14,966 nt of DNA, taken from IMG/VR virus record IMGVR_UViG_3300005856_000048, positions 1-14,966 of that record. One strand, given 5' to 3'. Each line of letters opens with the position of its first letter. Positions within the stretch are counted from its first letter, which is position 1. The position numbers were made by a program, and so were the translations under genes. The notes under the pieces were generated by a model. The model was not told where the DNA came from. It ran no database searches and worked only from the letters and a program-made list of their open reading frames with translations. Positions 1-14,297 of the stretch are shown here, in pieces.

Positions 1-1898
1 CGTGTGAACCACCTGATGTATGCCCTTATTGCCACGTAGTCTTCCCACAGTTTAGCCCAGTCGTTGGGTATCCTCATTAATTGTATTATTTGCGGTAGCT
101 TATCCATGAATTGGGGTAAGTATTCACTTAACACGGGCATTTCTAAAATGGTGGGGTAGTATGGTGGGGAGTATGCCTTAACTAGGGCATTGGCGAAATC
201 AACGTCTATCCCGTTTGCTAACAATACCTGTAACGCATTCTCAGGTGTTGTTGCATGCCTACCTAGCCATATGCGGGCATAGGTTTCAAAGTTCCTTAGT
301 AAATATCTATGGTAGACTAGATTGGCTATGAATAGGAAGACTTCCCTTGCTTGCGGTGTTTCTCTCATTAACGTTGTTAATTCATCAATGTACTTGGGGA
401 TCTCTGTCTTTGGAATAAGCCCCATGCCTATTATACCCAGGATCCTATACAACGCATACCTTGCGTAGTACCTTATCCTACGGAATGTACCAATCAGTTG
501 CTCTACCTCAAAGTATTTGGCTATGGCGTCGTTGAATGCTGAATCCCAAGTTAGGTGCATTTCCGCACCTGTAATGGATTTGTACAGTGGTGCGTAGTAT
601 TTGTCTAACACAGTTGTGACGTAGCCAACCATATCGTTTATTGAGTCACTGATACCGATCAAGTAGTCTCTGACTCCTGCTAGTAATGCCCTAAACATGT
701 TGCTCATATACGTGTTCACCTTATCCATTAATGCCCTTAGCATTAGTAACTTAGATTCTGGTTCAATGTACCTCACGGGTGCGTTTAACCAACCCGTCAC
801 CCATTTCTGATTATACATGTCAAAGTAGGCTACGTGGACTGATACGGGGAACATGTTGTTCATCATTTGCAATGTGACGGGTATTAACTCTATGTTTTCT
901 CTAATTAGATTCAGCAATCCTGTCCTTAGTAGGGTTTTTGATGCTGTAGTGACGTCAAAGACGGCTCTTAGGGCTATTAATGGGGCTACGTATGGGTGGA
1001 AGCCCCTGGCCATTAACACGTTTGTGACGTAATCAGTGTATATTTGGATTGGTGACGTGGCTTGGGGTTCCACAACCTTACCCAGCACGTCATACATTGT
1101 TGTCTCGTTTGTGATCTTATACTCACGTTCATAGTAGTCCCATATACCATGCCTAACCAGGTGTTCAATGTCGGTTCTGTCTAATAGGTGTGCTGATTGG
1201 TCTATGATTAACCATGCATCGGATGTGTATGATTGACCTGTCCTTGGGTCGTTGATCCATGCAAAGTGAGCTCTACCATGCCATTTCTGATATTCCGCTA
1301 GGGCTAGCAGGGCTAGGTTGTATTGGAAGTTGAGTTTAGCGGGTACCTGTGGGGTGAATGCGTTGATGATTTTAGCTTCAGCTTCCGCAAAGGTTTGGAC
1401 TTCAGGTGGTGGGACATACCAGGCGAATCCCGATAATGCACGCATTGTAAAGTCCCATACCTGGGTTGCTGATGGCAATTCATAAGCCCTTAGGTAGTAC
1501 ATGTAGGCTACGTCGGGTGGAACACCCCTGGCCCACATTGCCTTGACAAACGACTGATATGCTAATGCGGGTTGCTGATTAGGTGGTGCTGATGCAGGTA
1601 GGAATAAGTCCCTTAGCATGAATTCAACCAGGTCGTGGGTAGTGGGTAATTCGAATAGTGGGGCAACAGGTAGGTATCTTACGTTGCCGAATTTATCAAC
1701 CACGGTGATTAAATTGTTTTGTATTTCCTTCCTGTAGTCACTTAATGCCTGGTTGGCAACGTCTATGGATGTGAATGCTGATGGTAATGCTATTGTCTTT
1801 GCAATGAACCAGTATGGGAAGCCTCTATAAATCATTGTATTTGCCACGTTGTTAATGTTCTGTGTGATATCAAACCTACGGGCTATGTCAAGTAATTC
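1..1898 (-). CDS. C-terminal part of the giant minor structural protein (alpha-helical repeats); runs off the left edge
   Basis: Manual translation gives a frame open from 1913 to base 1 (~630 codons): ELLDIARRFDITQNINNVANTMIYRGFPYW...LFELPTTHDLVEFMLRD...YELPSATQVWDFTMR...AIRAYIRWFT. Not in the ORF track, probably because it has no stop in the window. Independent starts are possible (GTG 1847, ATG 1835), but it more likely continues the 774-aa ORF via a -1 shift. Confidence 0.85.
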
Positions 1899-4207
1899 GT
1901 ATGTGACGGTAGTTCAAAGGGCATGTTGCCCATTCCCATTGAGTAGAATGTTAGCCACCACACGTAGCGCCACAGGTAGCGTAGCGGTTCCATGAATGCT
2001 AATGTTCCGCTTAGCGCCATGCCTCTTCCCAATTCATCGCCTAGTTTACCCAATAGATCACCGATTGGTTGTAGTAGTTTCCCTAGTTCTAAACGGATCT
2101 TTAGACCTATGCCTAATGGTGTTAAATCAACTTCCTGTGTCCCAGTTGCTGACCCTATTTTCTCGATTAGTTTCCCTAGGAAGTATATGGATGATGCTAT
2201 TGCGGTTGATATAATAGCCACCGCACCGAATGCGCCTGTTAGGTTTGGTATTGCTACTTTAACGGGGTCTACACCTGACTTTATTACGATGTATGGTTCA
2301 TTTTTGAACACGTCACGTGACATCATAGCGGGTATTTCGGTAATCATCACAGGTAGGAAGATGGCTTTCATTGCACCGTCCACAATACCCTTTGCGAAAT
2401 CCGTTATTCCACTTCCCAAGTTGCCTAAGCCACCTGCTAGCGTTTGCGCTAGTTTAATGAAACCTGAGCCTAGTCCCTGGATTTCATTGACTATCCAGTT
2501 GAATATGTCCTTTAGCGTGTCGTAGAATGACTTAAACGCATTCTCAAACCCCTTGCCGATTGACTCAAATAATTTGATTATTTGTTGCACTACTGGGTTT
2601 TTGCCTAGATTCTCAAAGAACTTGGCTACGTTGCTGAAGAAATCGGTGATTGCCTTGATGTTGATTGTTTTTAGGAAGTCCATGAATGCCTTATACACGG
2701 CGTCAAAGACTTCCTTGGGTATTTGGGATATTGTTTTTGGTAGGTTTTCTATTGCCTTTATGAATCCCTGGAATGACTTATTGATATCATTGAATAGTGT
2801 TTCAAACCCTGAACCTATGGTTCCCAAGTTGCTTACAATTGAACCACTGATTGACGTGAATGTTGCGGTTAATGCATTTGCGAATCCCTGGGCTTCCTTT
2901 ATGAATTTCTCAAAGTTTGACTCAATGCCTTTAACAAATCCCTCAATGTCCTTGCCTAGGGTTGTGAAAAAGCCCGTTACCTTACTGTATGCTTCCTTTC
3001 CGAAATTCTCAATGTCTTTGCCTATTGTTGTAAAGAATGATTCAACGTCTTTAATGAATCCTTGGATGTACTTGCCTGCATCTGTTAATGCACCGTATAT
3101 CATCTTGCCGAATGATTCAACGTCACTGATGAATTGTTTGAAATACTTGCCTGCTGTGTCTATGAAATCGCTAATGTACTTGCCGATTGCCGTGAATGTG
3201 TTCCTTATGTCGTTGCCTATGGTGGTGAACACATTGCTTAACGTGGATGCGAATGACTCAATGCCGTGTAGAATATCCGTTGCTATGTGGGTGAATGTTG
3301 ATTGGACTGTGGATGCGAATGACGTTATTGCGTTGATTGCCGTGGTTATGAATGACTCGATGCGTGGGAATACTATGGATTGTAATACGTGTGCGAATTG
3401 GGATAGTGCGTTTTGTATGGTTGATCCGATTGAGGTTATTGCGTTGATGATACTCGATACTGCATTTTGCACTACACCGCTGATCTGTGTTATGATGCCA
3501 CTTAGCGTTGATGTGAATGATGCGAATGCGGTTTGGATTGTTGATGCAATGCTTGATATTGTTGAAATCACACCTGATAGTGCGTTTTGGATTGATGAAA
3601 CTATGCTTGTTATTGTTGATACTATGCCCGATAGTGTTGATTGGATTGTTGATGATAATTGTGTGGCTAAGCCACCGATTGCCGATGCCAGGTTACTGAA
3701 TTGGCTTGATATTGTCGTTGCAATGCTACTTAAGCTTGATGCCAAGTTACTGAGCCCTGAGCTAACGGTTGATGCAATGCCTGATAATGCCGATGTTATG
3801 CTTGATGCCACGGATTGGAACGTGTTAGCTAAGTTACCTAACCCTGATTGGATTCCGCTTAATGCGCTTGATAATGATGAACTCAATGAGTTTAAAGCCG
3901 ATTGGACTGTTGATGATAGTGTTGATATTCCACTTGATACGTAACTCACGACACTGTTGATTGCGTTTATAACGGGCTGTAGCAATTGCTGAATCCCAGT
4001 TGTAATGTAGTTTGCTAGGTTTGTTAATTGTTGCGCTAGCCAATTTTCTAATTGCCCGATTGGATCAGTTAAGCCACCATATTCAACAATCGCATTGTTG
4101 ATGTCTTCCATTGTTAATTGTGATAATGCCTTCTCAATGATGCCGTTGTTTAGGTTGTTTTGGATTAGGATGCGTATTTCATCGGGATTAAAGAATGGGG
4201 TGTCCAT
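1883..4207 (-). CDS. N-terminal part of giant tape-measure-like / terminal filament protein (774 aa up to the frameshift)
   Basis: Long amphipathic S/T/A/G-rich, then F/K/D/E-rich quasi-repeats (TAGKYFKQFISDVESF / DAGKYIQGFIKDVESF; TIGKDIENFGK / TLGKDIEGFVK), followed by hydrophobic segments. ATG overlaps the upstream stop (TAATG). Confidence 0.8.
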   Translation of the reverse strand: MDTPFFNPDEIRILIQNNLNNGIIEKALSQLTMEDINNAIVEYGGLTDPIGQLENWLAQQLTNLANYITTGIQQLLQPVINAINSVVSYVSSGISTLSSTVQSALNSLSSSLSSALSGIQSGLGNLANTFQSVASSITSALSGIASTVSSGLSNLASSLSSIATTISSQFSNLASAIGGLATQLSSTIQSTLSGIVSTITSIVSSIQNALSGVISTISSIASTIQTAFASFTSTLSGIITQISGVVQNAVSSIINAITSIGSTIQNALSQFAHVLQSIVFPRIESFITTAINAITSFASTVQSTFTHIATDILHGIESFASTLSNVFTTIGNDIRNTFTAIGKYISDFIDTAGKYFKQFISDVESFGKMIYGALTDAGKYIQGFIKDVESFFTTIGKDIENFGKEAYSKVTGFFTTLGKDIEGFVKGIESNFEKFIKEAQGFANALTATFTSISGSIVSNLGTIGSGFETLFNDINKSFQGFIKAIENLPKTISQIPKEVFDAVYKAFMDFLKTINIKAITDFFSNVAKFFENLGKNPVVQQIIKLFESIGKGFENAFKSFYDTLKDIFNWIVNEIQGLGSGFIKLAQTLAGGLGNLGSGITDFAKGIVDGAMKAIFLPVMITEIPAMMSRDVFKNEPYIVIKSGVDPVKVAIPNLTGAFGAVAIISTAIASSIYFLGKLIEKIGSATGTQEVDLTPLGIGLKIRLELGKLLQPIGDLLGKLGDELGRGMALSGTLAFMEPLRYLWRYVWWLTFYSMGMGNMPFELPSHTNYLT

Positions 4208-4434
4208 TATCTTCCACCCCTGGCGATTTGCTTACCGTAGTTTGCCTTGGCTAACTCATACAGCATGATTTCCTGCATTATCTTTTTTTCTAATTCCTTG
4301 GTGTTGTGGAAGTCCAGGGGGAATGCGTTTGATACCCAATTATCATCATCATCAATAATTTGCACTGAGGCTATGTAGTGCGGATCCCATGGTACATTGG
4401 CTTTATGGATCTCTCTAATGATTACCTTAACCAC
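4207..4434 (-). CDS. Small hypothetical protein (75 aa) translationally coupled to the giant protein
   Basis: GTG start 24 nt downstream of the conserved 13-mer; its TAA overlaps the next ATG at 4207. Confidence 0.8.
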   Translation of the reverse strand: MVKVIIREIHKANVPWDPHYIASVQIIDDDDNWVSNAFPLDFHNTKELEKKIMQEIMLYELAKANYGKQIARGGR

Positions 4435-4457: not shown

Positions 4458-4470
4458 AATTTATTTTTAA
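4458..4470 (-). promoter_or_regulatory. Conserved promoter motif TTAAAAATAAATT
   Basis: Exact consensus copy, 24 nt upstream of GTG 4434. Confidence 0.75.
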
Positions 4471-4493
4471 TGACAGGTGGGGTTAGTATTCGA

Positions 4494-5180
4494 TTATTTG
4501 GATGATCCAGTTGTCGTTTGACCTTGGCTTGGTTGCTGTGTTGGGAAAGGGGATGATGCTGGGGCTATGGTTGTTACTTCCACCTCAGGTGGCTTGGCGT
4601 ATTGTGCAAGTGTAGCCTTTAGTCTATCGCTCATTAATTGACGGATGTCATTATTAACTAACTGGAGACCGTAAAGTGACAGTAGCGTATTCATAAAGTA
4701 AATATTGTTATCAACCTGCTTATTGTAAATGTTTAAGTACCTGTCCTCAGTATAATGCCTATGCATAGTATCCTGTTGAATAAGTGAGAAATACTTATTA
4801 TCCATATCCATAGTGTGACGGGTTGATTCAGCATTGAGAGCCGTGGCTACGTTAAGAGCCGTGGTGGTAGCGGCCACCAACTGATTCATGTTATTAGTCT
4901 GTGAGTTTAGTGCTTGGATTTGGGCTTGGGTTAGCTGGGTTTGGTTGTTTGTGGTGTTGATGGACATGAATATGTAGACACCCAGTGCTATCACCACGGC
5001 TAGGATTAGTATGATGATGCCAGCTGTTATGGGGTCTATGTAGATAACATACCCATTGGATGTTGTTGTGGATTGTGCAAACACTATGTGTGGGTTAGCC
5101 ACCATTAACATGGCTATTATTGACATTACTACCGCTAACTTGCGCTTATCCATGCTTAGGAGACCTGTGAGTGGGTTCAT
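4494..5180 (-). CDS. Membrane protein (228 aa): signal-peptide-like N-terminus, TM helix, Q/N-rich helical region
   Basis: MDKRKLAVVMSIIAMLMVANPHIVFA|QS signal-like segment; hydrophobic ITAGIIILILAVVIALGVYIFMSI; P/T/Q/S-rich tail. Confidence 0.8.
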   Translation of the reverse strand: MNPLTGLLSMDKRKLAVVMSIIAMLMVANPHIVFAQSTTTSNGYVIYIDPITAGIIILILAVVIALGVYIFMSINTTNNQTQLTQAQIQALNSQTNNMNQLVAATTTALNVATALNAESTRHTMDMDNKYFSLIQQDTMHRHYTEDRYLNIYNKQVDNNIYFMNTLLSLYGLQLVNNDIRQLMSDRLKATLAQYAKPPEVEVTTIAPASSPFPTQQPSQGQTTTGSSK

Positions 5181-5206
5181 ATCGTTTTTAATTGACTGTG
5201 TTGTGT

Positions 5207-5219
5207 AATTTATTTTTAA
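5207..5219 (-). promoter_or_regulatory. Conserved promoter motif TTAAAAATAAATT
   Basis: Exact copy, 27 nt upstream of ATG 5180. Confidence 0.75.
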
Positions 5220-5228
5220 TCTGGGTAA

Positions 5229-6005
5229 CTATGGTTTGTTTAGCGGTGTTGGGTAGACCATTGAGCCACTGCACCCTGGGATTCCTGCTTTATCTATGAA
5301 CTGTATTAATAATGCGGGTTCTAGGAGGGCATACTTATCATCACCGTAATTGACAAAGGACTTCCCAACGTCTAAGCCGATTGCGTGTGTTACATAACCC
5401 CAGTATGTGCAATTTAACGTGAGTTTAACATTAACAAGCGCCTTCAAGTCATCCTCAGGCATGTTGGGTGTTGCTAACGCTATGCCTAGGCAATTTTGTT
5501 GGTTAGCGTATAGACAGTTGCCTGCAACGTAGATGGCTCTGGGGTATGGTTCATCGGTTTGGAAGTTGATTGGCGTTGGTGCTTGGAATGTGGCGTAGCC
5601 GTAGTCGTATGGTGACGGTATTTCAATGTTGAAAAAGAGTAGGATGTTCCATATCCATTGTGGGAAGGTGATGGGGTATGTGATTTGAATGTTGCTTAGC
5701 CTGTATGTTGCGTTGCCGTATTGTAAAGTGTCTACGCATTTCATGACATGCCCAGCACTAACAACCGTGTTATTCATTATTTCATAAACTGAGCCACCGC
5801 ATGAACCAGTCAATTTTGGGTATTCACCGTTTGCGTGAAAAAAATCACTCTCACTAATAATAACCTTCCTTCCCTTTTTATCATAGAGTCCATCGGCTTT
5901 TTGAATGAATATTCCCTTGGTTACTAGGTCTTGGATTGTTATGCCGTCCTTAAGCTGAATAACTATGGTTTTGTCTCCTTGGAATAGGGTTTTGAACCGT
6001 GGCAT
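5229..6005 (-). CDS. Chymotrypsin/trypsin-like serine protease (258 aa)
   Basis: SCGGS, VVSAGHV (His86), YDYGY (Asp134) and PGCSGSMVY (Ser246) occur in canonical order and spacing. GGTGA SD at 6009-6013. Confidence 0.75.
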   Translation of the reverse strand: MPRFKTLFQGDKTIVIQLKDGITIQDLVTKGIFIQKADGLYDKKGRKVIISESDFFHANGEYPKLTGSCGGSVYEIMNNTVVSAGHVMKCVDTLQYGNATYRLSNIQITYPITFPQWIWNILLFFNIEIPSPYDYGYATFQAPTPINFQTDEPYPRAIYVAGNCLYANQQNCLGIALATPNMPEDDLKALVNVKLTLNCTYWGYVTHAIGLDVGKSFVNYGDDKYALLEPALLIQFIDKAGIPGCSGSMVYPTPLNKP

Positions 6006-6028
6006 GGTTCACCTTACCCATGCCGTGT

Positions 6029-6041
6029 AATTTATTTTTAA
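6029..6041 (-). promoter_or_regulatory. Conserved promoter motif TTAAAAATAAATT
   Basis: Exact copy, 24 nt upstream of ATG 6005. 6025-6042 is identical over 18 nt to 5203-5220. Confidence 0.75.
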
Positions 6042-6068
6042 TTAAACAATACTACTTGGCTTAACGTT

Positions 6069-7112
6069 TTAATCAATAAGTGATAATGCAATTGTTGGCA
6101 TGATACCGCTTGGTGGTGCGTCGTAAAAGGCAATTGTGTATGTTGTGTAGCTTGATGTTCCACTGCTTGGGTGTCCCGTATAAAATGATACCTGTGTTAA
6201 TGTTGATAATGTAAATGTACTATCTGTGGCTGAGAGAGACTTCCCAGTGAGTGATTCATATGTATACAGGTTTGATGTAGTTGTGTAGTTCCACATGAAA
6301 TAGCCGTAGAATAATTTATTCAGTATGGCGCTGTCACTTACGCTAACTATGCCATTCCATGAGCCATTAACAATCTTTGCCAAGCCATCAGCTGTATTTC
6401 CTACCCCCCACCAGTATGCTTGATATACATTCATGCTACTTGTGTTAATATTATTACCATAGAGGAATCCATATTCAGCGCCACCATTTGTTCCTACACT
6501 GTTTACAAGTGCCCATGTGCGTCCTATGATACCTGTTGATGGTACATTGGATGGTGTTGCTATGAGACCAGTAGAATTCTGGCTACTGGTTACTGTCATT
6601 GTTATCCCGTTGTTTACGCTTATTGTGCCATTACCGTACGTAGTCCATATGCTTGATAGTGTTGTTCCCTTGAAATTATCATAGATTAGGAATACGTTTT
6701 TGCCGTTGTCAAGTTGCCCGTAGGATAAGCCTAGGTAGTTTTGCCCGTAGATTGCGTTAATGCCTGCTATGTTGCCGTCTACTAGTTGTTGCATGGTGTC
6801 TATGATCATGTAAAGCGTGTAGGTGGAATTAGCACCAATGGATGGTGTCTTAACGAACCACCTGTGGTATGCCCCATCATACCCATCATACCATGAGTAT
6901 GCCTGGGTATTTGCCTGTGGGTCATAGAAAATAGTGTTTAGCGGTACCGCATAGGGGTCAATACCAACACCAAGTAGTGAAAGCAAGTAACTATGGTCTA
7001 TTTTGATTTCCTGGACATGTGGGTTTACGGTTGCAGTTGATTGACCGTTTGATATAGTTACCTTGATTACACGCTTCCTAACAGGTAGTATGGTGTATTC
7101 TAGGTCTGGCAT
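6069..7112 (-). CDS. DUF2341-like protein with ConA-like beta-sandwich; putative receptor-binding protein (347 aa)
   Basis: FYDPQANTQAYSWYDG...WFVKTPSIGANSTYTLYM fits the DUF2341 pattern. DNGKNVFLIYDNFKGTTLSSIW is a typical linker into a lectin-like domain. C-terminal PPSGIMP. Confidence 0.7.
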   Translation of the reverse strand: MPDLEYTILPVRKRVIKVTISNGQSTATVNPHVQEIKIDHSYLLSLLGVGIDPYAVPLNTIFYDPQANTQAYSWYDGYDGAYHRWFVKTPSIGANSTYTLYMIIDTMQQLVDGNIAGINAIYGQNYLGLSYGQLDNGKNVFLIYDNFKGTTLSSIWTTYGNGTISVNNGITMTVTSSQNSTGLIATPSNVPSTGIIGRTWALVNSVGTNGGAEYGFLYGNNINTSSMNVYQAYWWGVGNTADGLAKIVNGSWNGIVSVSDSAILNKLFYGYFMWNYTTTSNLYTYESLTGKSLSATDSTFTLSTLTQVSFYTGHPSSGTSSYTTYTIAFYDAPPSGIMPTIALSLID

Positions 7113-7134
7113 TGTGTTTAGTTGATTGGTGATG

Positions 7135-7147
7135 TATTTGTTTTTAA
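7135..7147 (-). promoter_or_regulatory. Promoter motif variant TTAAAAACAAATA
   Basis: 2 mismatches to consensus, 23 nt upstream of ATG 7112. Confidence 0.65.
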
Positions 7148-7151
7148 CCCG

Positions 7152-8933
7152 TCACTGTATGAATCCCTGGGTTAGTGTTGTTGATGGCATGTAGCCCTTG
7201 GGTACAAACTTGGCGTGGTATAGGTTCAGTGGGTTGTTGAACCACACCATTAATGCGTCCTGTGGTGCATCAACGTTAGCGTAGTGTAGGTCAAACCTGT
7301 GGGTTCCGAATGGTATGGTTGCCGTGTATGGTGTTGATTGCATGCTTTGATTTGTCCATGAGCTTAAAATGTTGCTTCCGCCTGATGCCCAATTAGCCCC
7401 ATCACTACCTAACTCACCTGTTAGGCTTAGCCACACGTTGATTGCATCATCAACAAGGACATACATTGTTGATTGTTTACTTGCCTGTACCCAACCGATG
7501 AATTTAGCTAGCCACGTGTAATTGGGGCTTATAGGTGAACCTACACCGCATGAATAGCCTGCTTCCCATGCACTTAACATGTTGGCTTGGCTTGTGCATG
7601 AACTTGATCTACAGTTTGAGTATGAGCCACCGCTTACGGTGCATGGTATTGTGGATGTGAATAGTGATGGTACTGTTTCACAACATTGTTGTAATGTAAC
7701 TGTGAGCGTCCACCCAGTTGAGCTAAACGTAAAGGATTGCGTATTCAAACTTGTTCCAAGCAATGGTTCAACTGTTGGTGAATACGCTACAGGAGGAACG
7801 GTTTGTGATGTGTTAGCCCATATGCTGTATAACAACCCCTGATCCATAATGTTACCGATGTTATCAGTGCTCAATGAACCAGTGATTGTTGAATTAATAC
7901 CGTAATTAACACCGTCAATTGTTGTTGTGTTAGTGGGTATCATGTATATTTGTGTTGATCCACTGTTAAGTTGATTAATCATTGTGTCCGTTGCCTTTAA
8001 CCAAACCACAGCTGTGCCATTGTTGTTTTTTGCATCAACCTCAACCCAGAATGGTACCTTATTCCCACTTGCATCTAGGATGTAAACGTTGCTTAAATCC
8101 TCATTAACGTTAATGTAATTTGACGGTTGAATGGCTATGGGTATTTGCTGGCCACTGGGGTATGTGTAGCCTGGGTTAGTTAATTTAATGACTATGGGTA
8201 GCCACTGTGTCATTGAATTAAGCATTTCATCAATTGCAAGTAGCGCCTCAGTGAGTTTATTCCAATCATGACTAGTCACAATATCGAAAGCTAACTTTCC
8301 GCTCATTTGCATGGGAACGTAGGCAATGGGGTTGAATATGCCTTGTAATTGGGTTGGAACCGTGTAATTGTAGCCGTAAAGGTATGTGAAATAGTAAATG
8401 AACGTGTTGTATGCAAGTAGAATGTGGTTCCAAATTGCATTGTAATGGTCGTGGCTAACTGGGTCACCTACCGTGACGGGTTTAAGCGTGTTCAACATGT
8501 CCATTATCACATTGTACTTTGACGTGAGGTACATTCCCGTGTTTTGATTAACCAGGTTGATTAATTGAATCAGTTGGTAAAGGTATTTGAGTTGGTTAAG
8601 CAGTATGGTGCGCCTATTGTTCCACACGGATGGTGGAATTGTTTGATTGGGGCAATGTGAATAGACTGTTACCCCACCTGAGAGTTGCGAGAAAATGTAG
8701 GGTATTGGGATGCAGACGGGTAGACTAAATGTGATTTTTGAACCAGGGGTTATGACACTCGATAGTGATGGTGGGAGTAGGGATGGTGGTATTGACGTTA
8801 CTACCTGCCTGGTTGGTGTTATTAATGTTTCACTTCCCACTCCTGAATCGCTTAGTGAGAATGCCGTGATTGTGACGCTTACACCACCGCTCGATGCGTC
8901 ACTTGTTACTACTGGATACGCTACGGTGCTCAT
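7152..8933 (-). CDS. Multidomain fibre/adhesin (593 aa): helical repeats, DUF2341, Cys-rich segment, PA14-like domain
   Basis: EDLSNVYILDASGNKVPFWVE...AVVWLK...IYM (DUF2341). AKFIGWV...MYVLVDDAINVWL...GTHRFDLHY...LMVWF (PA14-like, DD at 495-496). Start overlaps the upstream stop (ATGA). Confidence 0.75.
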   Translation of the reverse strand: MSTVAYPVVTSDASSGGVSVTITAFSLSDSGVGSETLITPTRQVVTSIPPSLLPPSLSSVITPGSKITFSLPVCIPIPYIFSQLSGGVTVYSHCPNQTIPPSVWNNRRTILLNQLKYLYQLIQLINLVNQNTGMYLTSKYNVIMDMLNTLKPVTVGDPVSHDHYNAIWNHILLAYNTFIYYFTYLYGYNYTVPTQLQGIFNPIAYVPMQMSGKLAFDIVTSHDWNKLTEALLAIDEMLNSMTQWLPIVIKLTNPGYTYPSGQQIPIAIQPSNYINVNEDLSNVYILDASGNKVPFWVEVDAKNNNGTAVVWLKATDTMINQLNSGSTQIYMIPTNTTTIDGVNYGINSTITGSLSTDNIGNIMDQGLLYSIWANTSQTVPPVAYSPTVEPLLGTSLNTQSFTFSSTGWTLTVTLQQCCETVPSLFTSTIPCTVSGGSYSNCRSSSCTSQANMLSAWEAGYSCGVGSPISPNYTWLAKFIGWVQASKQSTMYVLVDDAINVWLSLTGELGSDGANWASGGSNILSSWTNQSMQSTPYTATIPFGTHRFDLHYANVDAPQDALMVWFNNPLNLYHAKFVPKGYMPSTTLTQGFIQ

Positions 8934-9295
8934 GAACTGAGCACCTGTGTGACAAAGTAATACGGGTAGGATCTTGGTGTGCCACTAATCTGATTGATAG
9001 TTACTTTGATGCCCATGCCTGGTGGGATTTGCAACGTGTGGATTCTTAGGATTGCATTATTAACTGGTCCTGCGAATGTGCGTTGTAGGAACACGTAATA
9101 ATTCGTTCCATCCACTGTAACATAAACCGTGATGGTTGTTATGTCACCGTTTTGCATGTTTTGCAATGATAACCAACCCTCGATGATTGCGTCCGTTTGC
9201 CCACCGCTATATGTGAACACCGTAGTCTCAGTGTTTAAACTACTTAGTGATAATGTTCCGTTGGAATAACTGATTGAGTTTATTACAACTGGCAT
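8930..9295 (-). CDS. Beta-strand-rich hypothetical structural protein (121 aa)
   Basis: GGTGGTGA SD at 9299-9306; alternating hydrophobic beta pattern; coupled to the adhesin gene. Confidence 0.8.
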   Translation of the reverse strand: MPVVINSISYSNGTLSLSSLNTETTVFTYSGGQTDAIIEGWLSLQNMQNGDITTITVYVTVDGTNYYVFLQRTFAGPVNNAILRIHTLQIPPGMGIKVTINQISGTPRSYPYYFVTQVLSS

Positions 9296-9305
9296 GGTTC
9301 ACCAC

Positions 9306-9773
9306 CTATGAGATGCTTAGCGTCATTGTTACTTGCCATGTTTCACCAGGTTGCTTAATACCCATGTTTGCAACTAACCTATCGATCGGTATGTATCCGC
9401 AATTTTGCCCAACGTAGTTTGTAATGGCAACTGCTATTTCGTTCCATTGGAAGTTAGCCATTGTGTCCGTGAATGTTGCCGTGACGGATAGTTGATTATT
9501 GTTTATTGAAACTTGCCCAGGGCTTGAGCATGATTGGATTGAGCCCTGGAGACATGTTTGACTTGCCGATGCGGGTGTTGAACCGTTCCCAACGCATATG
9601 CCCAACGTGACGTTTGTTATGCTACCCACAACAATGTACCAAATTATTTCAACACCGTATGTGAGGAAGATATTACCCTCATAATGCTCAATTGACTTTA
9701 CTACACCGTTCCTATCCTTTTTAACAATGGTTACCTTTGCGGTTCCTTTACCGCTTTCACTATGGCTTACCAT
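9306..9773 (-). CDS. Protein resembling phage tail-collar/baseplate fibre-attachment domain (DUF3751-like), 155 aa
   Basis: Motif series NIFLTYG...ICVGNGSTPASASQTCL...ATFTDTMANFQWNEIAV...DRLVANMGIKQPGETWQVTMTLSI. GGTGA SD at 9780-9784. Confidence 0.6.
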   Translation of the reverse strand: MVSHSESGKGTAKVTIVKKDRNGVVKSIEHYEGNIFLTYGVEIIWYIVVGSITNVTLGICVGNGSTPASASQTCLQGSIQSCSSPGQVSINNNQLSVTATFTDTMANFQWNEIAVAITNYVGQNCGYIPIDRLVANMGIKQPGETWQVTMTLSIS

Positions 9774-9784
9774 TACCCGTCACC

Positions 9785-10426
9785 TCAGTTGCATGTTGAT
9801 GAATTTGTTAATTCCAACAATGCCCTAACGTAGCTGTAGTTCTCTGATCTCAGATAGATCTGGATGGCATCGCAAACGTCTATTTCAATTTGTGTTCCTG
9901 GGAAGATTGGGAAGTGTTGCCCACTTGCCCCACCCACGTAGACCACATAGGTCGTGTCCTGTGTGACATACAGTAGTGCACGCTTGATGGGTGTGCTTGT
10001 ACTTACTAACGATGTTGCCGTGGATAACACGGGTACTACAATGCTCATTAATGCGGTTGGTGAAACATACAGTTTAATTTTCTGAACCGTTTGCTGTACC
10101 TGTTGGACTGTGTTTTGAATGTTAATCAAATAGACTGAAATGTAATTGTAGATTTGATTGATTGCACCCTGCAAAAATTGAGCAATGTAGATGGGATCCA
10201 GGTCATGCAATACCTTATACCCTTCCACGTAAATCTCGTTTCCAAAGAATGCTGATCCAGCTGTGTATAATTCATCAAAGTATGGTGTGAATTGACCGTT
10301 TGTTAGGATGATGTTTGTGTAGTAATTCATTGTGTAGAGTTGATCCACGGCTGACACTAATGCATTCCAATCCGATGAACGCAATACCTGGAATGGCTGT
10401 TTGAATGGTACTCCGAATACGCTCAT
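9785..10426 (-). CDS. Hypothetical fibre-like structural protein (213 aa): SSDWNAL motif, short coiled coil, C-terminal beta domain
   Basis: First gene of a 4-gene unit with the 13-mer 25 nt upstream; INIQNTVQQVQQTVQKIK heptad segment. Confidence 0.75.
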   Translation of the reverse strand: MSVFGVPFKQPFQVLRSSDWNALVSAVDQLYTMNYYTNIILTNGQFTPYFDELYTAGSAFFGNEIYVEGYKVLHDLDPIYIAQFLQGAINQIYNYISVYLINIQNTVQQVQQTVQKIKLYVSPTALMSIVVPVLSTATSLVSTSTPIKRALLYVTQDTTYVVYVGGASGQHFPIFPGTQIEIDVCDAIQIYLRSENYSYVRALLELTNSSTCN

Positions 10427-10450
10427 AGCGTTGTAAAATTGAATAAAACT

Positions 10451-10463
10451 AATTTATTTTTAA
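10451..10463 (-). promoter_or_regulatory. Conserved promoter motif TTAAAAATAAATT
   Basis: Exact copy, 25 nt upstream of ATG 10426. Confidence 0.75.
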
Positions 10464-10478
10464 CCAGAATGAGGGGTG

Positions 10479-10784
10479 TTACTTAGCCCCTAACACATCC
10501 CTCAGTTCCTTAACCTTTTGGACTATTTTGCGTGCTTGCTTAACTACAGGGTGGTTAAGTAGATTGGGGTCATCTAGTGATGCTAATTCCAGGGATAAGT
10601 TGTATGCCTCAGTGACTAATTCCATTAGTTTATCTGTGAATGCCTTGGCTTTGGGGTCTATTGTTTGTTGTTGTAGTGATACATTGGGGATGACTGGGGT
10701 TGTTGTTGGTGTTGGTGGTGTTGTTATGGTGGGTGTCACAATGGACTGTCCTGTCCCTTGAACCCTGGTATCGGACTCAGACAT
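10479..10784 (-). CDS. Hypothetical protein (101 aa): T/P-rich N-terminus and helical hairpin
   Basis: TPTITTPPTPTTTP followed by two amphipathic helices; overlaps the 439-aa gene by 49 nt; TATA box 26 nt upstream. Confidence 0.75.
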   Translation of the reverse strand: MSESDTRVQGTGQSIVTPTITTPPTPTTTPVIPNVSLQQQTIDPKAKAFTDKLMELVTEAYNLSLELASLDDPNLLNHPVVKQARKIVQKVKELRDVLGAK

Positions 10785-12055
10785 ACCGTGCTAAGTAGAT
10801 TAAGCAGGGTATTTAAAGTACTCGGATCTAAACCAAAATTAACCCATTTACTTAGCCATGCCTGGTTGAATGCCTGTAATCCTATGCCTTCCCATGCCCT
10901 GTACCTAACCCTATCGTGATTGTGGTGGAATGCCATGCAGTATTCTACACCTGCATCCTCATATGCGTTAATCAAAAATGGGTTAGCCACCTTGTTCATC
11001 AACATGTTTCTGATTGTTTTTCTAATTGTTTTGATTAATTCCATTGCCCTACCCCACCTTTCCGCACGTGCTGTCAATGGTGCGAATGGTGCGTTTTCAA
11101 TAATGCCTGGGAATGCTTCCTGGAATAATTCCACTAAACTTGGTGGAATAGGTATGTTGGGTATTGCTGGGTCTATGAATGCCGTCTTAATCGCCGTTTG
11201 CAATGGTGAATAATTGTTTTGGACGGCTTCACCAATGCGCCCCACTAACCGTGCGAAATTGAGATTAACCATTGGAACGGGTTCATCAATGAAATACTCA
11301 CCATCCAGGGGGTTCCAATCCAGGACAGTACCCCATAATGCCTGGTCTATCACGGCAAAATGCGGGTATGCGGTTTTTCCGTTTAGTTCACTGATTGTTG
11401 TTAGCCATTGATAAGGCAACACAACATACAGTGGGTTGGTTACGGATTCTGGGGCGAATTGCGAGAAATCAAGTATCATGACGTCCATTGGTGTGGATTT
11501 CTCAATAATCTGCATCACAGTGTTCAACATCTTATTAGCGTAGATGGAAAATCCCTGGTTCACATCCACACCTTGCAAAAATGATGGGGTTGTCATGTTG
11601 CGTGAAACCTTGTTGATTGCTGAACGTAACCATTGCTTAATGTTCACTACCGTGAGCCCTGGATCATAGTAACTATAATCGAATACTGATTGACCGAATA
11701 TAGCCTTTGTGATTTGAGTCTGACTGTAGTTGCTTTGAGCTTCTGGGGCTACAACCGTGATGTTTGGAATGCTAAATGGTGAAATGTTTAGGCTTTGCAG
11801 GTAGTTTGAGAAATCTGGGAATGTGATGTTTATGCCCTGCCACGTGAAATCATCAAACTGGATTGGTACACCTAATGAGATTGCGAATAGGAAGTCTAAC
11901 AATAGTGATGTTTCCATTTCAAAGTTGAATGGGAAGAATTGTATCGTGACACGGCTTGGTAGTACCGTGACGTCTTGCTTATTATTCAGGGTAACCTTAG
12001 CCTGGTGTACACCACCCGTCCCAAAGAGATTATAACTTTGGACTGGGGTGGCCAT
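10736..12055 (-). CDS. Minor virion protein (439 aa) with probable C-terminal MCP-like helical domain
   Basis: Starts 3 nt after the glycosyltransferase stop; AIFGQSVFDYSYYDP motif; C-terminus aligns by eye with the MCP (FGLDPSTLNTL vs YGANPTILQAI). Confidence 0.7.
   Translation of the reverse strand: MATPVQSYNLFGTGGVHQAKVTLNNKQDVTVLPSRVTIQFFPFNFEMETSLLLDFLFAISLGVPIQFDDFTWQGINITFPDFSNYLQSLNISPFSIPNITVVAPEAQSNYSQTQITKAIFGQSVFDYSYYDPGLTVVNIKQWLRSAINKVSRNMTTPSFLQGVDVNQGFSIYANKMLNTVMQIIEKSTPMDVMILDFSQFAPESVTNPLYVVLPYQWLTTISELNGKTAYPHFAVIDQALWGTVLDWNPLDGEYFIDEPVPMVNLNFARLVGRIGEAVQNNYSPLQTAIKTAFIDPAIPNIPIPPSLVELFQEAFPGIIENAPFAPLTARAERWGRAMELIKTIRKTIRNMLMNKVANPFLINAYEDAGVEYCMAFHHNHDRVRYRAWEGIGLQAFNQAWLSKWVNFGLDPSTLNTLLNLLSTVCLSPIPGFKGQDSPL
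10810..10817 (-). promoter_or_regulatory. Canonical archaeal TATA box TTTAAATA inside the 439-aa gene
   Basis: 26 nt upstream of ATG 10784, the same spacing as the other promoters. Confidence 0.45.
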
Positions 12056-12058
12056 TGG

Positions 12059-13108
12059 CTACTCGATGTATTTAACTATTTTAGAGTATAAATTTGTAAT
12101 CGTCATGTCTTTCACGGTATCGTAAGCACGCTTAGCCCTTTCCTCATATTCACCGCTCTTAGCCATATCCACGGCATTAACTATGGCATCGGCTAGGTAC
12201 TGTGGGTCATAGTCATGTAACTCGAATTCTACACCGTTATCAACAATTTCCTTAATGTTATCCCATGGGAAGGTAATGTTGGCTTTAACATCAGCAAACT
12301 CATTGAATGGTTCCATGTTCACGAAAATGGCTAATCTACCTAATGAGTTTGCTTCCAAGACGGGTAGTCCAAATCCTTCCGCAAGCGATGGAACTAGTAC
12401 ATAATCCGCTAGTTTGAATAAGGCAAGGACTTGTTTCCTTGCCATTTGCCCGAATTGCCCCACAACGTAAATTGAATCCTTTGGGGCGTTGGGTAGGACT
12501 TTTTCCATGGTGGGTTTGTCGGCTATGGCAAGTACAATAAACTTTGACCTAACATTCTCGGGTATTTTGTTTAATGCATCAACTAGTTTATGCCAACCCT
12601 TGCGTAGGTGGGATCCTTCCGCTATTGCGAAAATTACCTTGCCTGGGAAGTCACGTTCAATCTTTTTCCTTAGGAATTCGGCATACTCGGTGGCTTCCCT
12701 GTTTTCATCGGGATCATATGCATGGTGGACAATATCCAAAACGTGGTAACCCACCTCACTTAGCTTGTTTGCTGTGTACATCGAGTTTGCGATAAAGTCA
12801 ATGTTGTACCACACGGGGTATCGGGATGGTTCACCATAGGGTGTACCTTCCGTTGTCCCATACCATGCTTGTTTAAGTGATTTTGCGTAGATTTTGTTTG
12901 TTGAATATTGCCCAGCATACCTACCACTCATGGTGGTATTGACAGGGAAAATCCATAGGATGGCGTTTGGACGGTAGAAAAGGAAGTCCTGGTGGATGTA
13001 GTCACTCGATACTTTCACGTCATGCCCCATTGCCCTTGCCACTTTGGCGATGTGTGAGGCTACTATGCTTAGGCTTGGTGCTTTAGCGTGTACAATCATT
13101 AATTTCAT
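12059..13108 (-). CDS. GT4 (GT-B fold) glycosyltransferase (349 aa)
   Basis: FIANS, LRKGW and ADYVLVPSLAEGFGLPVLEA (EX7E signature); adjacent to the MCP gene. Confidence 0.93.
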   Translation of the reverse strand: MKLMIVHAKAPSLSIVASHIAKVARAMGHDVKVSSDYIHQDFLFYRPNAILWIFPVNTTMSGRYAGQYSTNKIYAKSLKQAWYGTTEGTPYGEPSRYPVWYNIDFIANSMYTANKLSEVGYHVLDIVHHAYDPDENREATEYAEFLRKKIERDFPGKVIFAIAEGSHLRKGWHKLVDALNKIPENVRSKFIVLAIADKPTMEKVLPNAPKDSIYVVGQFGQMARKQVLALFKLADYVLVPSLAEGFGLPVLEANSLGRLAIFVNMEPFNEFADVKANITFPWDNIKEIVDNGVEFELHDYDPQYLADAIVNAVDMAKSGEYEERAKRAYDTVKDMTITNLYSKIVKYIE

Positions 13109-13131
13109 GATTGTGGAAGGAAAAAAGGATG

Positions 13132-13144
13132 AATTAATTTTTAA
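13132..13144 (-). promoter_or_regulatory. Promoter motif variant TTAAAAATTAATT
   Basis: 1 mismatch to consensus, 24 nt upstream of ATG 13108. Confidence 0.7.
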
Positions 13145-13168
13145 CTGTTTGATTAGGCTATTGGCTCA

Positions 13169-13555
13169 TTAGTATGATAGACCGCTAACACCCAATGCCT
13201 GGGCAATGGCCTGTAGTATGGTTGGGTTAGCACCGTAAGCGGTCTGGAAGTAAGACGTGAGACCGTTCACCTCATTGGCAAGTGCTGGACCTGTGATACG
13301 TTGTGTCGCATGCCAAACCTTTTCACCAAAGGCTATGTAAACGGCTCTAGTTGGGCCAGCTACACCATACTGATCGAGTATGCCACCTACCAGGAACTGT
13401 ACATTTGCAACGCTTACTATACCCTCCTGTGCCCTGCTTACGGCAACTGGCTGTACTTCAGTGAACCTGGTTTGAACTACTGTAGGGTCGTATTTGGCCT
13501 GCCACTTAGCGAGCCTTGCATTTCCTGGCTTGGGTAAGCCCCTACCCCTGGCCAT
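13169..13555 (-). CDS. Major capsid protein, SIRV2-type alpha-helical fold (128 aa from ATG 13555)
   Basis: MARG...RLAKWQAKY-DPTV...ILDQYGVAGPTRAVYIAFGEKV...GPALANEVNGL...AYGANPTILQAI parallels the recalled SIRV coat protein (RYAKWQAKF...VLTQYGITGPNRAIYQGFGLKV...GPALVNMINGL...AFNANPQVL). ATG 13555 is preferred over the track's TTG 13564. Confidence 0.93.
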   Translation of the reverse strand: MARGRGLPKPGNARLAKWQAKYDPTVVQTRFTEVQPVAVSRAQEGIVSVANVQFLVGGILDQYGVAGPTRAVYIAFGEKVWHATQRITGPALANEVNGLTSYFQTAYGANPTILQAIAQALGVSGLSY

Positions 13556-13580
13556 ATTGGTCAAAAACCTTATCCGCCAT

Positions 13581-13593
13581 GTTTTATTTTACT
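13581..13593 (-). promoter_or_regulatory. Degenerate promoter motif AGTAAAATAAAAC upstream of MCP
   Basis: AAAATAAA core 26 nt upstream of ATG 13555. Confidence 0.5.
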
Positions 13594-13740
13594 GTTATTC
13601 TTTTACACTGTGCTTAATGCTCAATATTACTTACAATTACTTATGATTAATGCTAATCATTCATTATGTATTGGGATTACATGCTTTCATGGGTTGTGTT
13701 GGGGCTTGTAACAGGGGTTATGTGTACATTGTTTGCGTGA

Positions 13741-13753
13741 TTAAAAATAAAAT
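13741..13753 (+). promoter_or_regulatory. Promoter motif variant TTAAAAATAAAAT
   Basis: 1 mismatch, plus strand, 23 nt before in-frame GTG 13776. Confidence 0.65.
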
Positions 13754-13784
13754 ACTGACTGTGTGTGTTTCCCAGGTGGTGTAT

Positions 13785-13994
13785 GTGAGTGATGGGGATG
13801 CAAGGAATAGGCGCATAATGATACTTTCGAATGTGGAAACACGACCATCGAAACTTGTTAGTGGGCTTGTTTCCTACATATCGAAATACCTCATTAGTGT
13901 TGATTATGAGATTCATCAACGTTATGATGGGAATGATGTAGTGATTGAGGTTAGGATTAAGAATCTTGCCGAAATGATCAATAAGTATGGTTAA
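13785..13994 (+). CDS. Small alpha/beta hypothetical protein (~69 aa; start GTG 13785 or 13776, not 13650)
   Basis: Promoter motif at 13741 and GGTGGTG SD-like sequence at 13775-13781 place the start here. Apparent paralog of the next gene. Confidence 0.7.
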   Translation: MSDGDARNRRIMILSNVETRPSKLVSGLVSYISKYLISVDYEIHQRYDGNDVVIEVRIKNLAEMINKYG

Positions 13995-14003
13995 AAATAA
14001 ATA
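13991..14003 (+). promoter_or_regulatory. Promoter motif variant TTAAAAATAAATA
   Basis: Overlaps the upstream stop codon; 25 nt before ATG 14028. Confidence 0.7.
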
Positions 14004-14027
14004 GATGCTTACGTTTTTTAAAACGCT

Positions 14028-14255: not shown

Positions 14256-14297
14256 TGACGGTTATAGAGTTAAATAGTTTTGTTTAAAATTAAAATC

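What the first reader, a model, noticed from the sequence alone, without database searches (positions are those of the whole stretch)
9306..9773. Caudoviricetes-style tail-collar/baseplate domain in an adnavirus
Seen: motif series N-x-x-L-T-x-G / VGNGST...QTCL / ATF...ANFQWNE / DR-x-V...G-x-K...W. From recall, this matches the pattern of tail-fibre-proximal (DUF3751-like) proteins of tailed viruses. The nearby 593-aa protein also starts with SLSDSGVGSE, a short motif type I associate with such tail proteins. Inference: transfer of a fibre-attachment module between realms (Duplodnaviria to Adnaviria). It sits in one operon (213-155-121-593 aa) that may encode a discrete end structure.
Basis: partly seen in the sequence, partly recalled or inferred. 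Interest (0 to 1): 0.65.

Follow-up and report, generated by a model that had tools for sequence, protein, structure and literature searches.

The report
Phage fibre-anchor domain in a rod virus
A small gene in a rod-shaped archaeal virus is a real relative of small proteins that tailed phages use near their baseplates and fibres, and it sits in a swappable gene cassette that probably builds the virus's host-binding end fibres.

Summary
The window is a rudivirus-like (Adnaviria) genome piece.

The nearest relatives outside its own clade are in tailed viruses:
- Bacillus phage SP-15 and Listeria phage LIS04, where the gene lies just after the baseplate J/I genes.
- Methanobacterium virus PhiF1, with three copies.
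- About 500 metagenomic clusters.

The AlphaFold model (pLDDT 94.5) best matches a domain of the HFTV1 baseplate hub (Z 10.1). Next come the phi812 baseplate arm-segment protein (Z 8.1-8.6) and GP4 fibre I gp80 (Z 6.2).

The link to Pfam PF12571 (old DUF3751) is remote and is not membership. The window protein itself fails the model.

The gene belongs to a swappable cassette, 155-121-593-347. This cassette is absent from sister genomes with 97% identical coat protein. The 155+121 pair recurs in more distant filamentous-virus contigs, and betalipothrixvirus ORF164 is a remote homologue. So this is not a one-off import.

Most likely function: a subunit or anchor of the terminal fibres. This is inferred, not shown. 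The direction of cross-realm transfer is plausible but unproven.

The parts
9306..9773 (-). 155-aa stand-alone fibre/baseplate-type domain protein (phrog_23653 family): N-terminal beta-hairpin, one helix, then a beta-sandwich
   Evidence: ORF. phrog_23653 2.9e-19. tblastn to SP-15, LIS04 and PhiF1. Profile search found 528 clusters. AF2 model pLDDT 94.5. HFTV1 gp44 Z 10.1, phi812 gp118 Z 8.1-8.6, GP4 gp80 Z 6.2.
8930..9295 (-). 121-aa eight-stranded jelly-roll protein, the conserved partner gene of the 155-aa gene
   Evidence: AF2 pLDDT 93.1. Generic jelly-roll matches: Ena fibre subunits Z 11.5 and 10.3, C1q/TNF-like and phage cement proteins Z about 8. It follows a 155-type gene in L004, L005, L022, L031 and L030. 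It is 92.6% identical between the window and L022, where the 155-aa protein is only 63% identical.
7152..8933 (-). 593-aa putative receptor-binding protein; its start overlaps the 121-aa gene by 4 nt
   Evidence: Weak DUF2341 hit, E 0.002. ESM-Atlas leads to PA14 and DUF2341 clusters, leads only. The region from about residue 90 is homologous to the 206-aa ORF of L023.
8649..8933 (-). N-terminal extension of the 593-aa protein (about 70-95 aa), containing the conserved F-S-L-S-D-S motif
   Evidence: Present in the window, L022, L005 and L031, which all carry 155+121. Absent from the L023 and L026 homologues, which lack 155+121.
6069..7112 (-). 347-aa protein related to the C-terminal part of SIRV2 ORF564 (minor virion protein family, DUF2341-like); last gene of the variable cassette
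   Evidence: phrog_7548 8.4e-13, matching profile positions 240-580 of 591. SIRV2 ORF564 is itself phrog_7548. tblastn to SIRV2 24445-25101 at 2e-11 and to AFV9 ORF1170 at 9e-9. No match in L023, L024 or L026.
9785..10426 (-). 213-aa conserved rudiviral core protein (SIRV2 ORF269/gp42 homologue); upstream flank of the cassette
   Evidence: BLASTP E 1e-18 over the full length. phrog_7221 1.1e-23. 92% identical in L023 and L024.
5229..6005 (-). 258-aa conserved protein; downstream flank of the cassette
   Evidence: 96% identical in L023 and L024, which lack the cassette.
13169..13564 (-). Rudivirus-type major capsid protein (context; identifies the realm)
   Evidence: Pfam Sulf_coat_C 1.3e-25. 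About 40% identity to all Rudiviridae.
3..4434 (-). 75-, 774- and 615+-aa genes, together equivalent to one giant terminal protein in relatives
   Evidence: Collinear with the 1438-aa ORF of L022 and the 1955-aa ORF of L030. Residues 676-767 of the 774-aa protein match SIRV2 ORF1070 at 1e-4.

Best explanation
The 155-aa ORF is an expressed-type gene for a stand-alone member of a widespread virion-appendage domain family. Tailed viruses use this fold at the baseplate/fibre junction in several ways:
- As a domain of the baseplate hub (HFTV1 gp44).
- As arm-segment subunits strung on a scaffold peptide (phi812 gp118).
- As the subunit of chain-like fibres (GP4 gp80).
- More remotely, as the N-terminal anchor domain of P2 gpH-type fibres (PF12571).

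In this rudivirus-like virus the gene is the first gene of a swappable four-gene adsorption cassette: 155, a 121-aa jelly-roll protein, a 593-aa lectin-like protein, and a 347-aa ORF564-like protein. The cassette lies between conserved core genes.

The most likely role is structural. The protein would oligomerise and would link or extend the receptor-binding proteins at the virion tips. It may dock on the N-terminal extension of the 593-aa protein, which occurs only together with it.

What is shown: homology, fold, cassette variability and co-occurrence. What is inferred: virion location, binding partner, oligomeric state, and acquisition from tailed viruses.
For: Sequence homology:
- tblastn hits only tailed viruses, E 5e-13 to 1e-7, at 83-86% coverage.
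- phrog_23653 2.9e-19.
- 528 clusters in the profile search.

Gene context in phages:
- In SP-15 and LIS04 the gene follows baseplate J, tail protein I and baseplate genes and precedes large fibre-like ORFs. This matches the J-I-H order of P2.
- In L008 it lies between large tail proteins.

Fold:
- pLDDT 94.5.
- HFTV1 9h4p_BD: Foldseek E 1.7e-5; Z 10.1, rmsd 3.2, 129 aligned.
- phi812 arm segment: Z 8.6 for 9fko_A and 8.1 for 9euf_b.
- GP4 fibre I: Z 6.2 with 110 aligned.
- BFVD hits include proteins annotated as tail fibre and tail-collar fibre.
- A distant family member in L030 hits phrog_4176 'tail fiber protein' N-terminus at 2.7e-14 and PF23140 Gp80 at 2.2e-5.

Cassette:
- Absent from L023 and L024 (coat protein 97% identical) and from L026. 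Present in L022, L031, L004 and L005.
- The 593-aa N-terminal extension co-occurs with 155+121.
- The 155-, 593-, 347- and 258-aa proteins are about 62-63% identical between the window and L022, while the coat protein is 92% identical. This is typical of host-interaction genes.

Literature:
- Subunits of this fold bind a rope or scaffold peptide by beta-sheet augmentation (PMC13730344, PMC13433997).
- Rudiviruses attach to host pili by terminal fibres (PMC10791045).
Against: - There is no direct evidence that the protein is in the virion. No isolate or proteome exists for this virus.
- SIRV2 has no detectable homologue, so the protein is not part of the core rudiviral terminus.
- In one phage contig (L007) a family member lies directly after the major capsid gene. 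That suggests some members could be head-associated.
- The fold matches other than HFTV1 are of middling Z.
- The function of the matched HFTV1 hub domain (residues 378-508) is not described in the paper.
- Assigning chain 9h4p_BD to gp44 rests on matching length and annotation only.
Confidence: 0.6

Rival explanations
1. The shared domain is ancient in both realms, or moved from filamentous archaeal viruses (or from cells) into tailed viruses. It would then be a long-standing component of filamentous archaeal virus termini, not a Duplodnaviria-to-Adnaviria import.
For: - Betalipothrixvirus ORF164 is a remote homologue (hhalign 92% probability, E 7.5e-7; Foldseek 3e-10). It lies next to the giant ORF1170.
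- Other lipothrixvirus proteins share the fold.
- The 155+121 pair occurs in three increasingly distant filamentous-virus lineages: the window clade, L031 and L030.
- The gene's GC content (0.429) equals that of the window (0.425), so there is no foreign signature.
Against: - The adnaviral clade is monophyletic (SH-aLRT 99), sits on a long stem, and is nested in a 24-row clade (98) that contains sequences from tailed-phage contexts.
- Diversity in tailed-virus contexts is far larger (about 500 clusters).
- The window protein is much closer to phage SP-15 (32% identity, E 2e-12) than to lipothrixvirus ORF164.
- The gene is absent from SIRV2, and tblastn found no match in any other catalogued rudivirus record.
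Confidence: 0.2
2. The protein decorates the virion body or a capsid surface, as a cement or decoration protein, and is not a terminal-fibre component.
For: In contig L007 a family member directly follows the Phage_capsid gene, a typical decoration-gene position. The L030 member weakly hits PHROGs annotated as head protein or virion structural protein (phrog_240 at 1.3e-3, phrog_20420 at 3.5e-5).
Against: - The best solved matches are all tail, baseplate or fibre parts.
- The gene travels with lectin-like receptor-binding-type genes, not with the coat protein gene.
- Sister viruses with a 97% identical coat protein do without it.
Confidence: 0.1
3. The protein is non-structural, and the resemblance to phage tail parts reflects only a common beta-sandwich arrangement.
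For: PHROGs lists phrog_23653 and phrog_5417 as 'unknown function'. Structural Z scores below 8 can be common arrangements (notes).
Against: - Homology to the phage proteins is established by sequence, not only by fold.
- The phage homologues lie in structural modules.
- The HFTV1 match covers 129 of 155 residues at Z 10.1 and stands above the rest of the list.
Confidence: 0.1

Closest known systems
phrog_23653 proteins of tailed viruses (Bacillus phage SP-15 SP15_058, Listeria phage LIS04_80, Methanobacterium virus PhiF1 ORF44/ORF46)
   Same: Same family by sequence (29-32% identity over 83-86% of the protein). Similar size (168-182 aa against 155), same conserved motifs, and also stand-alone proteins.
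   Different: These are in tailed viruses (Duplodnaviria) next to baseplate or tail genes, and sometimes in tandem copies. Their function is unannotated. None has a 121-type jelly-roll gene next to it detectable by sequence.
HFTV1 gp44 baseplate hub, residues 378-508 (PDB 9h4p chain BD)
   Same: Best solved structural match: Z 10.1, rmsd 3.2, 129 residues, 18% identity. It comes from an archaeal tailed virus.
   Different: It is an internal domain of a 954-aa hub protein, not a stand-alone protein. Sequence similarity is not significant (hmmsearch E 0.32). The role of that domain is not described.
Chain-like fibre subunits and baseplate arm-segment proteins (GP4 gp80 / PF23140, A1002 gp40 and gp41, phi812 gp118)
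   Same: Small stand-alone proteins of 140-176 aa with a similar beta-sandwich (Z 6.2 and 8.1-8.6). Two members of alignment A2 and the L030 member touch PF23140. Some family members occur as tandem paralogues, like A1002 gp40/gp41.
   Different: The known subunits form dimers strung on a rope or scaffold peptide. Neither dimerisation nor a rope partner is shown here. The window protein gives no PF23140 hit, and the structural alignment to phi812 covers only residues 55-155.
Pfam PF12571 Phage_tail_fib (formerly DUF3751), N-terminal anchor domain of P2 gpH-type tail fibres
   Same: Collinear motifs (helix, then G-V/I-G-D-G ... Q-T-x-L, then a strand with F/W-x-E) in the profile-profile alignment. 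Four of 100 family members hit the model. The gene position after baseplate J/I in SP-15 equals the position of gpH in P2.
   Different: The window protein fails the model, and hhalign probability is only 21%. PF12571 is the N-terminus of long trimeric fibres, whereas this is a separate small protein.
Betalipothrixvirus ORF164 family (AFV3, AFV6, AFV8, AFV9)
   Same: Remote homologue in another Adnaviria family. Same size, and it lies beside the giant terminal-type protein ORF1170.
   Different: Only about 21% identity over 87 aligned columns. No 121-type partner gene. Function unknown.

Membership tests
phrog_23653 (uncharacterised small proteins of tailed viruses) | Significant full-length match to the family profile | tested here: met
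   E 2.9e-19, residues 22-155 against profile positions 28-168 of 168. SP-15 and PhiF1 members score 7e-86 and 3e-49 on the same profile.
Pfam PF12571 Phage_tail_fib (old DUF3751) | Score above the curated cut-off (23 bits) on the Pfam model | tested here: not met
   No PF12571 hit at E<=1. No candidate anywhere in the window at E<=10. P2 gpH scores 193 bits as a positive control.
Pfam PF12571 Phage_tail_fib (old DUF3751) | Profile-profile similarity to bona fide N-terminal fibre domains | tested here: inconclusive
   hhalign of A2 against A3 (10 gpH-type domains): E 1.1e-3, probability 21%, 89 collinear columns. Four of 100 family members hit the model, best E 3e-5.
Pfam PF12571 Phage_tail_fib (old DUF3751) | Located at the N-terminus of a long fibre protein, followed by fibre repeats | tested here: not met
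   It is a stand-alone 155-aa ORF with its own stop codon. The next gene is a separate 121-aa ORF.
Chain-like fibre subunit (GP4 gp80, PF23140) / phi812 arm-segment type | Shared fold with the solved subunits | tested here: inconclusive
   8jou_a Z 6.2 with 110 aligned; 9fko_A Z 8.6 and 9euf_b Z 8.1 with 98-99 aligned. No PF23140 hit for the window protein.
Chain-like fibre subunit (GP4 gp80, PF23140) / phi812 arm-segment type | Binds an extended rope or scaffold peptide by beta-sheet augmentation, as dimers | not testable with these tools
   The one complex prediction gave no verdict (see Tried and rejected). Only co-occurrence of the 593-aa N-terminal extension with the gene is shown.
Rudiviridae-like virus (Adnaviria) as genomic host | SIRV-type major capsid protein plus conserved rudiviral core genes | tested here: met
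   Sulf_coat_C 1.3e-25. About 40% identity to all Rudiviridae coat proteins. Glycosyltransferase, ORF269 homologue and ORF564-like protein.
Conserved rudiviral gene set | The 155-aa gene is present in catalogued rudiviruses | tested here: not met
   No rudivirus record among the tblastn hits. No hit in the six-frame SIRV2 genome with the family profile. Absent from the closest sister contigs.

The most novel reading that the evidence does not exclude
Filamentous archaeal viruses (Adnaviria) build part of their terminal host-binding apparatus from a fibre module that they exchange with tailed viruses. The module is a fibre-anchor or fibre-subunit domain paired with a jelly-roll protein, and it moves as a cassette. 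The hosts are hyperthermophilic Thermoproteota, from which no tailed virus has been isolated (my own knowledge, not tested here). This would mean that host-recognition modules cross realm boundaries, and that an unseen pool of tailed viruses, or other carriers of the module, exists in hot springs.
Probability: 0.35. Interest if true: 0.75.

Novelty: new variant of a known kind. Interest (0 to 1): 0.6.

Why it matters
Apart from the SIRV2-type terminal fibres, the proteins that rod-shaped and filamentous archaeal viruses use to recognise hosts are largely unknown. They have been regarded as unrelated to those of phages.

A sequence-level homologue of a tailed-virus baseplate/fibre protein, inside a swappable cassette of an adnavirus, has three consequences:
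- It gives a concrete candidate for the terminal apparatus.
- It suggests that adsorption modules are shared across virus realms.
- It offers a testable mechanism borrowed from solved phage structures, in which subunits dock on an extended peptide.

It also assigns a likely structural role to phrog_23653 and phrog_5417, two PHROG families with no annotated function, and to the wider set of about 500 clusters found. My paper searches found no report of this link. That is a limited search and does not prove novelty.

Tried and rejected
- blastn of window 7000-13600 against phage records found no match.
- phmmer and profile searches of PDB sequences with the 155-aa protein, A2, P2 gpH 1-151 and A3 found nothing meaningful.
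The distribution in cellular genomes was therefore not surveyed.
- The 121-aa protein shows no similarity to the genes downstream of the phage homologues: SP15_059, LIS04_81, PhiF1 ORF45, the L027 110-aa ORF and the L032 152-aa ORF (BLASTP, tblastn and hhalign).
- tblastn of the 593-aa protein against phages found no match. BLASTP to SIRV2 ORF564 was not significant.
- The 213-aa protein is not similar to AFV9 'ORF269'. The shared ORF number is a coincidence.
- Complex prediction with the 155-aa protein, the 121-aa protein and the 593-aa N-terminal 95 residues gave no verdict (score 0.00). The partner was poorly folded and the controls were not run. This is neither for nor against binding.
- ESM-Atlas feature hits for the 121-aa protein (score 0.97, clusters labelled Uroviricota) may be its own cluster with automatic taxonomy. 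I did not use them as evidence.
- No reads tools and no alternative genetic code were used.
- The big profile search was used once, because the claim depends on the distribution of distant relatives.

Full report
**1. What is in the window**

All substantial genes from 3 to 13564 lie on the - strand in one direction.
- The 131-aa protein at 13169-13564 is a rudivirus-type major capsid protein. It hits Pfam Sulf_coat_C at 1.3e-25 and is about 40% identical to the coat proteins of all catalogued Rudiviridae.
- It is followed by a GT-B glycosyltransferase at 12059-13108.
- The 213-aa protein at 9785-10426 is a full-length homologue of SIRV2 ORF269/gp42 (E 1e-18).
- The 347-aa protein belongs to the SIRV2 ORF564 family (phrog_7548 at 8.4e-13; tblastn 2e-11).
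- The record is an IMG/VR linear contig of 14,966 bases.

The 'adnavirus' setting is therefore confirmed. This is a divergent rudivirus-like virus. One relative of the target gene sits in a MAG labelled Thermoproteus sp..

**2. The observation**

- Six close relatives exist in metagenomes, at 51-96% identity (alignment A1).
- A profile search of 1.8 billion representatives found 528 clusters at E<=1e-3, mostly stand-alone proteins of 150-220 aa.
- In a 100-sequence alignment (A2) the invariant and near-invariant columns are N34, G40, V61, G62, T73, L75, F101, W110, E112, R132, G138, K140 and W146. The motif series is the signature of a real family.

**3. Who the relatives are**

Against 50,697 phage records, tblastn hits only tailed viruses: Bacillus phage SP-15, Listeria phage LIS04 and Methanobacterium virus PhiF1. 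E-values run from 5e-13 to 1e-7, identity is 29-32%, and coverage is 83-86%. No rudivirus record is hit. The family profile finds nothing in the SIRV2 genome.

Gene contexts:
- In SP-15 and LIS04 the homologue lies directly after baseplate J, tail protein I and baseplate genes and before large fibre-like ORFs. That is the position of the tail-fibre gene H in P2 (J-I-H).
- PhiF1 has three copies, ORF40, ORF44 and ORF46.
- Metagenomic members lie between large tail proteins (L008), next to a GH108 endolysin (L028), in an archaeal context with Hjc (L029), and once directly after the major capsid gene (L007).
- Tandem paralogues are seen in PhiF1 (ORF44/ORF46) and in L032. In L027 and L028 a gene of nearly the same length (178 and 181 aa) lies directly upstream, but the family profile did not detect it, so that tandem arrangement is only suggested by length.

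**4. Fold**

With A2 as the alignment, AlphaFold2 gives a confident model (pLDDT 94.5, pTM 0.88). It has an N-terminal beta-hairpin, one helix and a beta-sandwich.

Solved matches, using a Foldseek-independent scan of 48,161 chains plus a second look at Foldseek's list:

| Match | Z | Aligned residues |
|---|---|---|
| HFTV1 tail chain 9h4p_BD, residues 378-508 | 10.1 (rmsd 3.2) | 129 |
| phi812 arm segment, 9fko_A | 8.6 | 99 |
| phi812 baseplate, 9euf_b | 8.1 | 98 |
| GP4 'fiber I', 8jou_a | 6.2 | 110 |
| Klebsiella phage KP1 baseplate | 5.7 | 122 |
| Bxb1 tail tip | 5.2 | 89 |
| phiKZ gp139 | 4.8-5.5 | 118-124 |

- I assign chain BD to gp44, the baseplate hub, by its length (954 aa) and annotation. 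This is an inference.
- Among predicted viral structures, the best hits are uncharacterised Caudovirales proteins (E 4e-11, TM 0.80). Others are archaeal tailed viruses HHTV-1 and HGTV-1, proteins annotated 'tail fiber' and 'tail collar fiber protein', and several lipothrixvirus proteins.
- ESM-Atlas structural neighbours are viral clusters with TM 0.83-0.88.

**5. DUF3751 / PF12571**

- The window protein does not hit it. P2 gpH scores 193 bits as a control.
- Four of 100 family members touch it, best E 3e-5, and two touch PF23140 (GP4 gp80).
- A profile-profile comparison of A2 with ten bona fide gpH-type domains (A3) gives E 1.1e-3 but only 21% probability. The motifs are collinear.
- A distant family member in contig L030 hits phrog_5417 (1e-19), the N-terminus of phrog_4176 'tail fiber protein' (2.7e-14) and PF23140 (2.2e-5).

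My reading is that this is a remote superfamily link, not membership.

**6. The gene is part of a swappable cassette**

IMG/VR holds sister contigs, and their content differs.

| Contig | Coat protein identity to window | Carries 155 and 121? |
|---|---|---|
| L023, L024 | 97% | No |
| L022 | 92% | Yes (155-aa protein 63% identical, 121-aa protein 92.6% identical) |
| L026 | 90% | No |

- In L023 and L024 the flanking 213-aa and 258-aa genes are 92% and 96% identical. Between them lie a 206-aa, a 61-aa and a 301-aa ORF instead of 155-121-593-347. L026 likewise lacks these genes and keeps only a short 593-like ORF.
- Presence therefore does not follow coat-protein relatedness, which points to recombinational exchange.
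- A more distant rudivirus-like contig, L031 (coat protein 74% identical), has 219-153-121-615.
- L030 shares only the giant terminal protein and the 121-aa family with the window. It has a 192-aa family member followed by a 122-aa member of the 121 family, plus a second 121-type gene.
- Betalipothrixvirus ORF164 (AFV3, 6, 8, 9), next to the giant ORF1170, is a remote homologue (hhalign 92% probability, E 7.5e-7).

**7. Partners**

- The 121-aa protein folds confidently (pLDDT 93.1) as an eight-stranded jelly roll. The matches are generic: Ena fibre subunits Z 11.5, phage cement protein 8.6, C1q/TNF-like about 7.5-8.0.
- The 593-aa protein has a weak DUF2341 hit and PA14-like leads.
They are present in the window, L022, L005 and L031, which all carry 155+121. 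They are missing from the L023 and L026 homologues, which lack 155+121. The numbers are small, but the pattern suggests a physical link.

**8. Mechanism**

In solved phages, small proteins of this fold form dimers that dock on an extended 'rope' or scaffold peptide by beta-sheet augmentation. Examples are GP4, VP1 and A1002 (PMC13730344) and the phi812 arm segments (PMC13433997). Alternatively the fold is a domain within a trimeric hub (HFTV1, PMC12494034).

Rudiviruses attach to host pili through terminal fibres (PMC10791045).

I therefore propose that the 155-aa protein is a subunit or anchor of the terminal fibres of this virus, and that it works with the 121-aa jelly roll and the lectin-like 593-aa and 347-aa proteins. 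The location, the partner and the oligomeric state are inferred.

**9. Direction of transfer**

In a maximum-likelihood tree of 105 members, the seven adnaviral sequences form one clade (SH-aLRT 99) on a long stem. This clade sits inside a 24-row clade (98) that contains SP-15, LIS04 and other members from phage contexts. That fits import from tailed viruses.

There are caveats:
- The tree is rooted only at the midpoint.
- Most rows have no genome context.
- L030 and the lipothrixvirus copies were not in the tree.
- The gene shows no compositional anomaly.

Several acquisitions or an old presence remain possible.

**10. Verdict**

This is a tailed-virus fibre/baseplate-type domain used by a non-tailed filamentous virus, inside a mobile adsorption cassette. 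It is a new variant of a known kind, of moderate to high interest.

Noticed in passing
window 6069-9773 versus L023 4636-6399, L024 and L026: Sister genomes with a 90-97% identical coat protein replace the whole 155-121-593-347 block with a shorter, mostly unrelated set (206, 61 and 301 aa). The flanking genes stay 92-96% identical in L023 and L024. This is a hypervariable locus of the host-range type.
   Followed up: yes
window 3-4434 (-); L022 15504-19820; L030 10333-16200: The 75-, 774- and 615+-aa genes of the window are collinear with a single 1438-aa ORF in L022 and a 1955-aa ORF in L030. The giant terminal protein is therefore split here or fused there. The C-terminus of the 774-aa protein weakly matches SIRV2 ORF1070, which as I recall is the SIRV2 tail-fibre protein.
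   Followed up: partly
window 1992-3944 (+): Long + strand ORFs of 177 and 463 aa lie antisense to the 774-aa gene. They are most likely shadows of its Ser/Thr/Ile-rich repetitive coding region. A 54-nt tandem repeat lies at 3527-3654.
   Followed up: partly
window 13169-13564: The coat protein gene has 51% GC against 42.5% for the whole window. It is the only gene checked that departs from the genome's composition.
   Followed up: no
window 7152-8933, 9785-10426; L010 (SIRV2) ORF564 and ORF269: The 213-aa protein, the region after the N-terminal extension of the 593-aa protein, and the N-termini of SIRV2 ORF564 and ORF269 all carry a similar '...S/Q-D-W-N...' helix motif. This hints that the ORF269-type and ORF564-type proteins share an N-terminal module.
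   Followed up: partly
P0001 (96% identical relative, JGI contig of 16,683 bases): JGI names this relative 'GTP cyclohydrolase III'. Nothing here supports that name, and it looks like an annotation error.
   Followed up: no
L003 (PhiF1) 4263-4646, 7845-8393, 8734-9267; L032 1036-1945; also L027 266-1362 and L028 127-1262: Family members occur as two or three paralogues in one tail region (profile hits in PhiF1 and L032). This recalls the two-protein chain-like fibre of phage A1002. In L027 and L028 the upstream neighbour has nearly the same length but was not detected by the family profile.
   Followed up: partly
P0012 (4676 aa) and P0061 (1245 aa): Two very long proteins match only profile positions of about 13-54, 13-14 times each. 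The N-terminal beta-hairpin region resembles a repeat unit of giant proteins.
   Followed up: no
window 10736-10784: The 439-aa and 101-aa genes overlap by 49 nt in different frames. The arrangement is conserved in L023.
   Followed up: no
window 13565-14280: An AT-rich stretch (GC about 0.38) separates the - strand structural gene string from a + strand gene that starts near 14280. It is probably a divergent promoter region. The ORFs of 114-129 aa inside it have no family hits.
   Followed up: no
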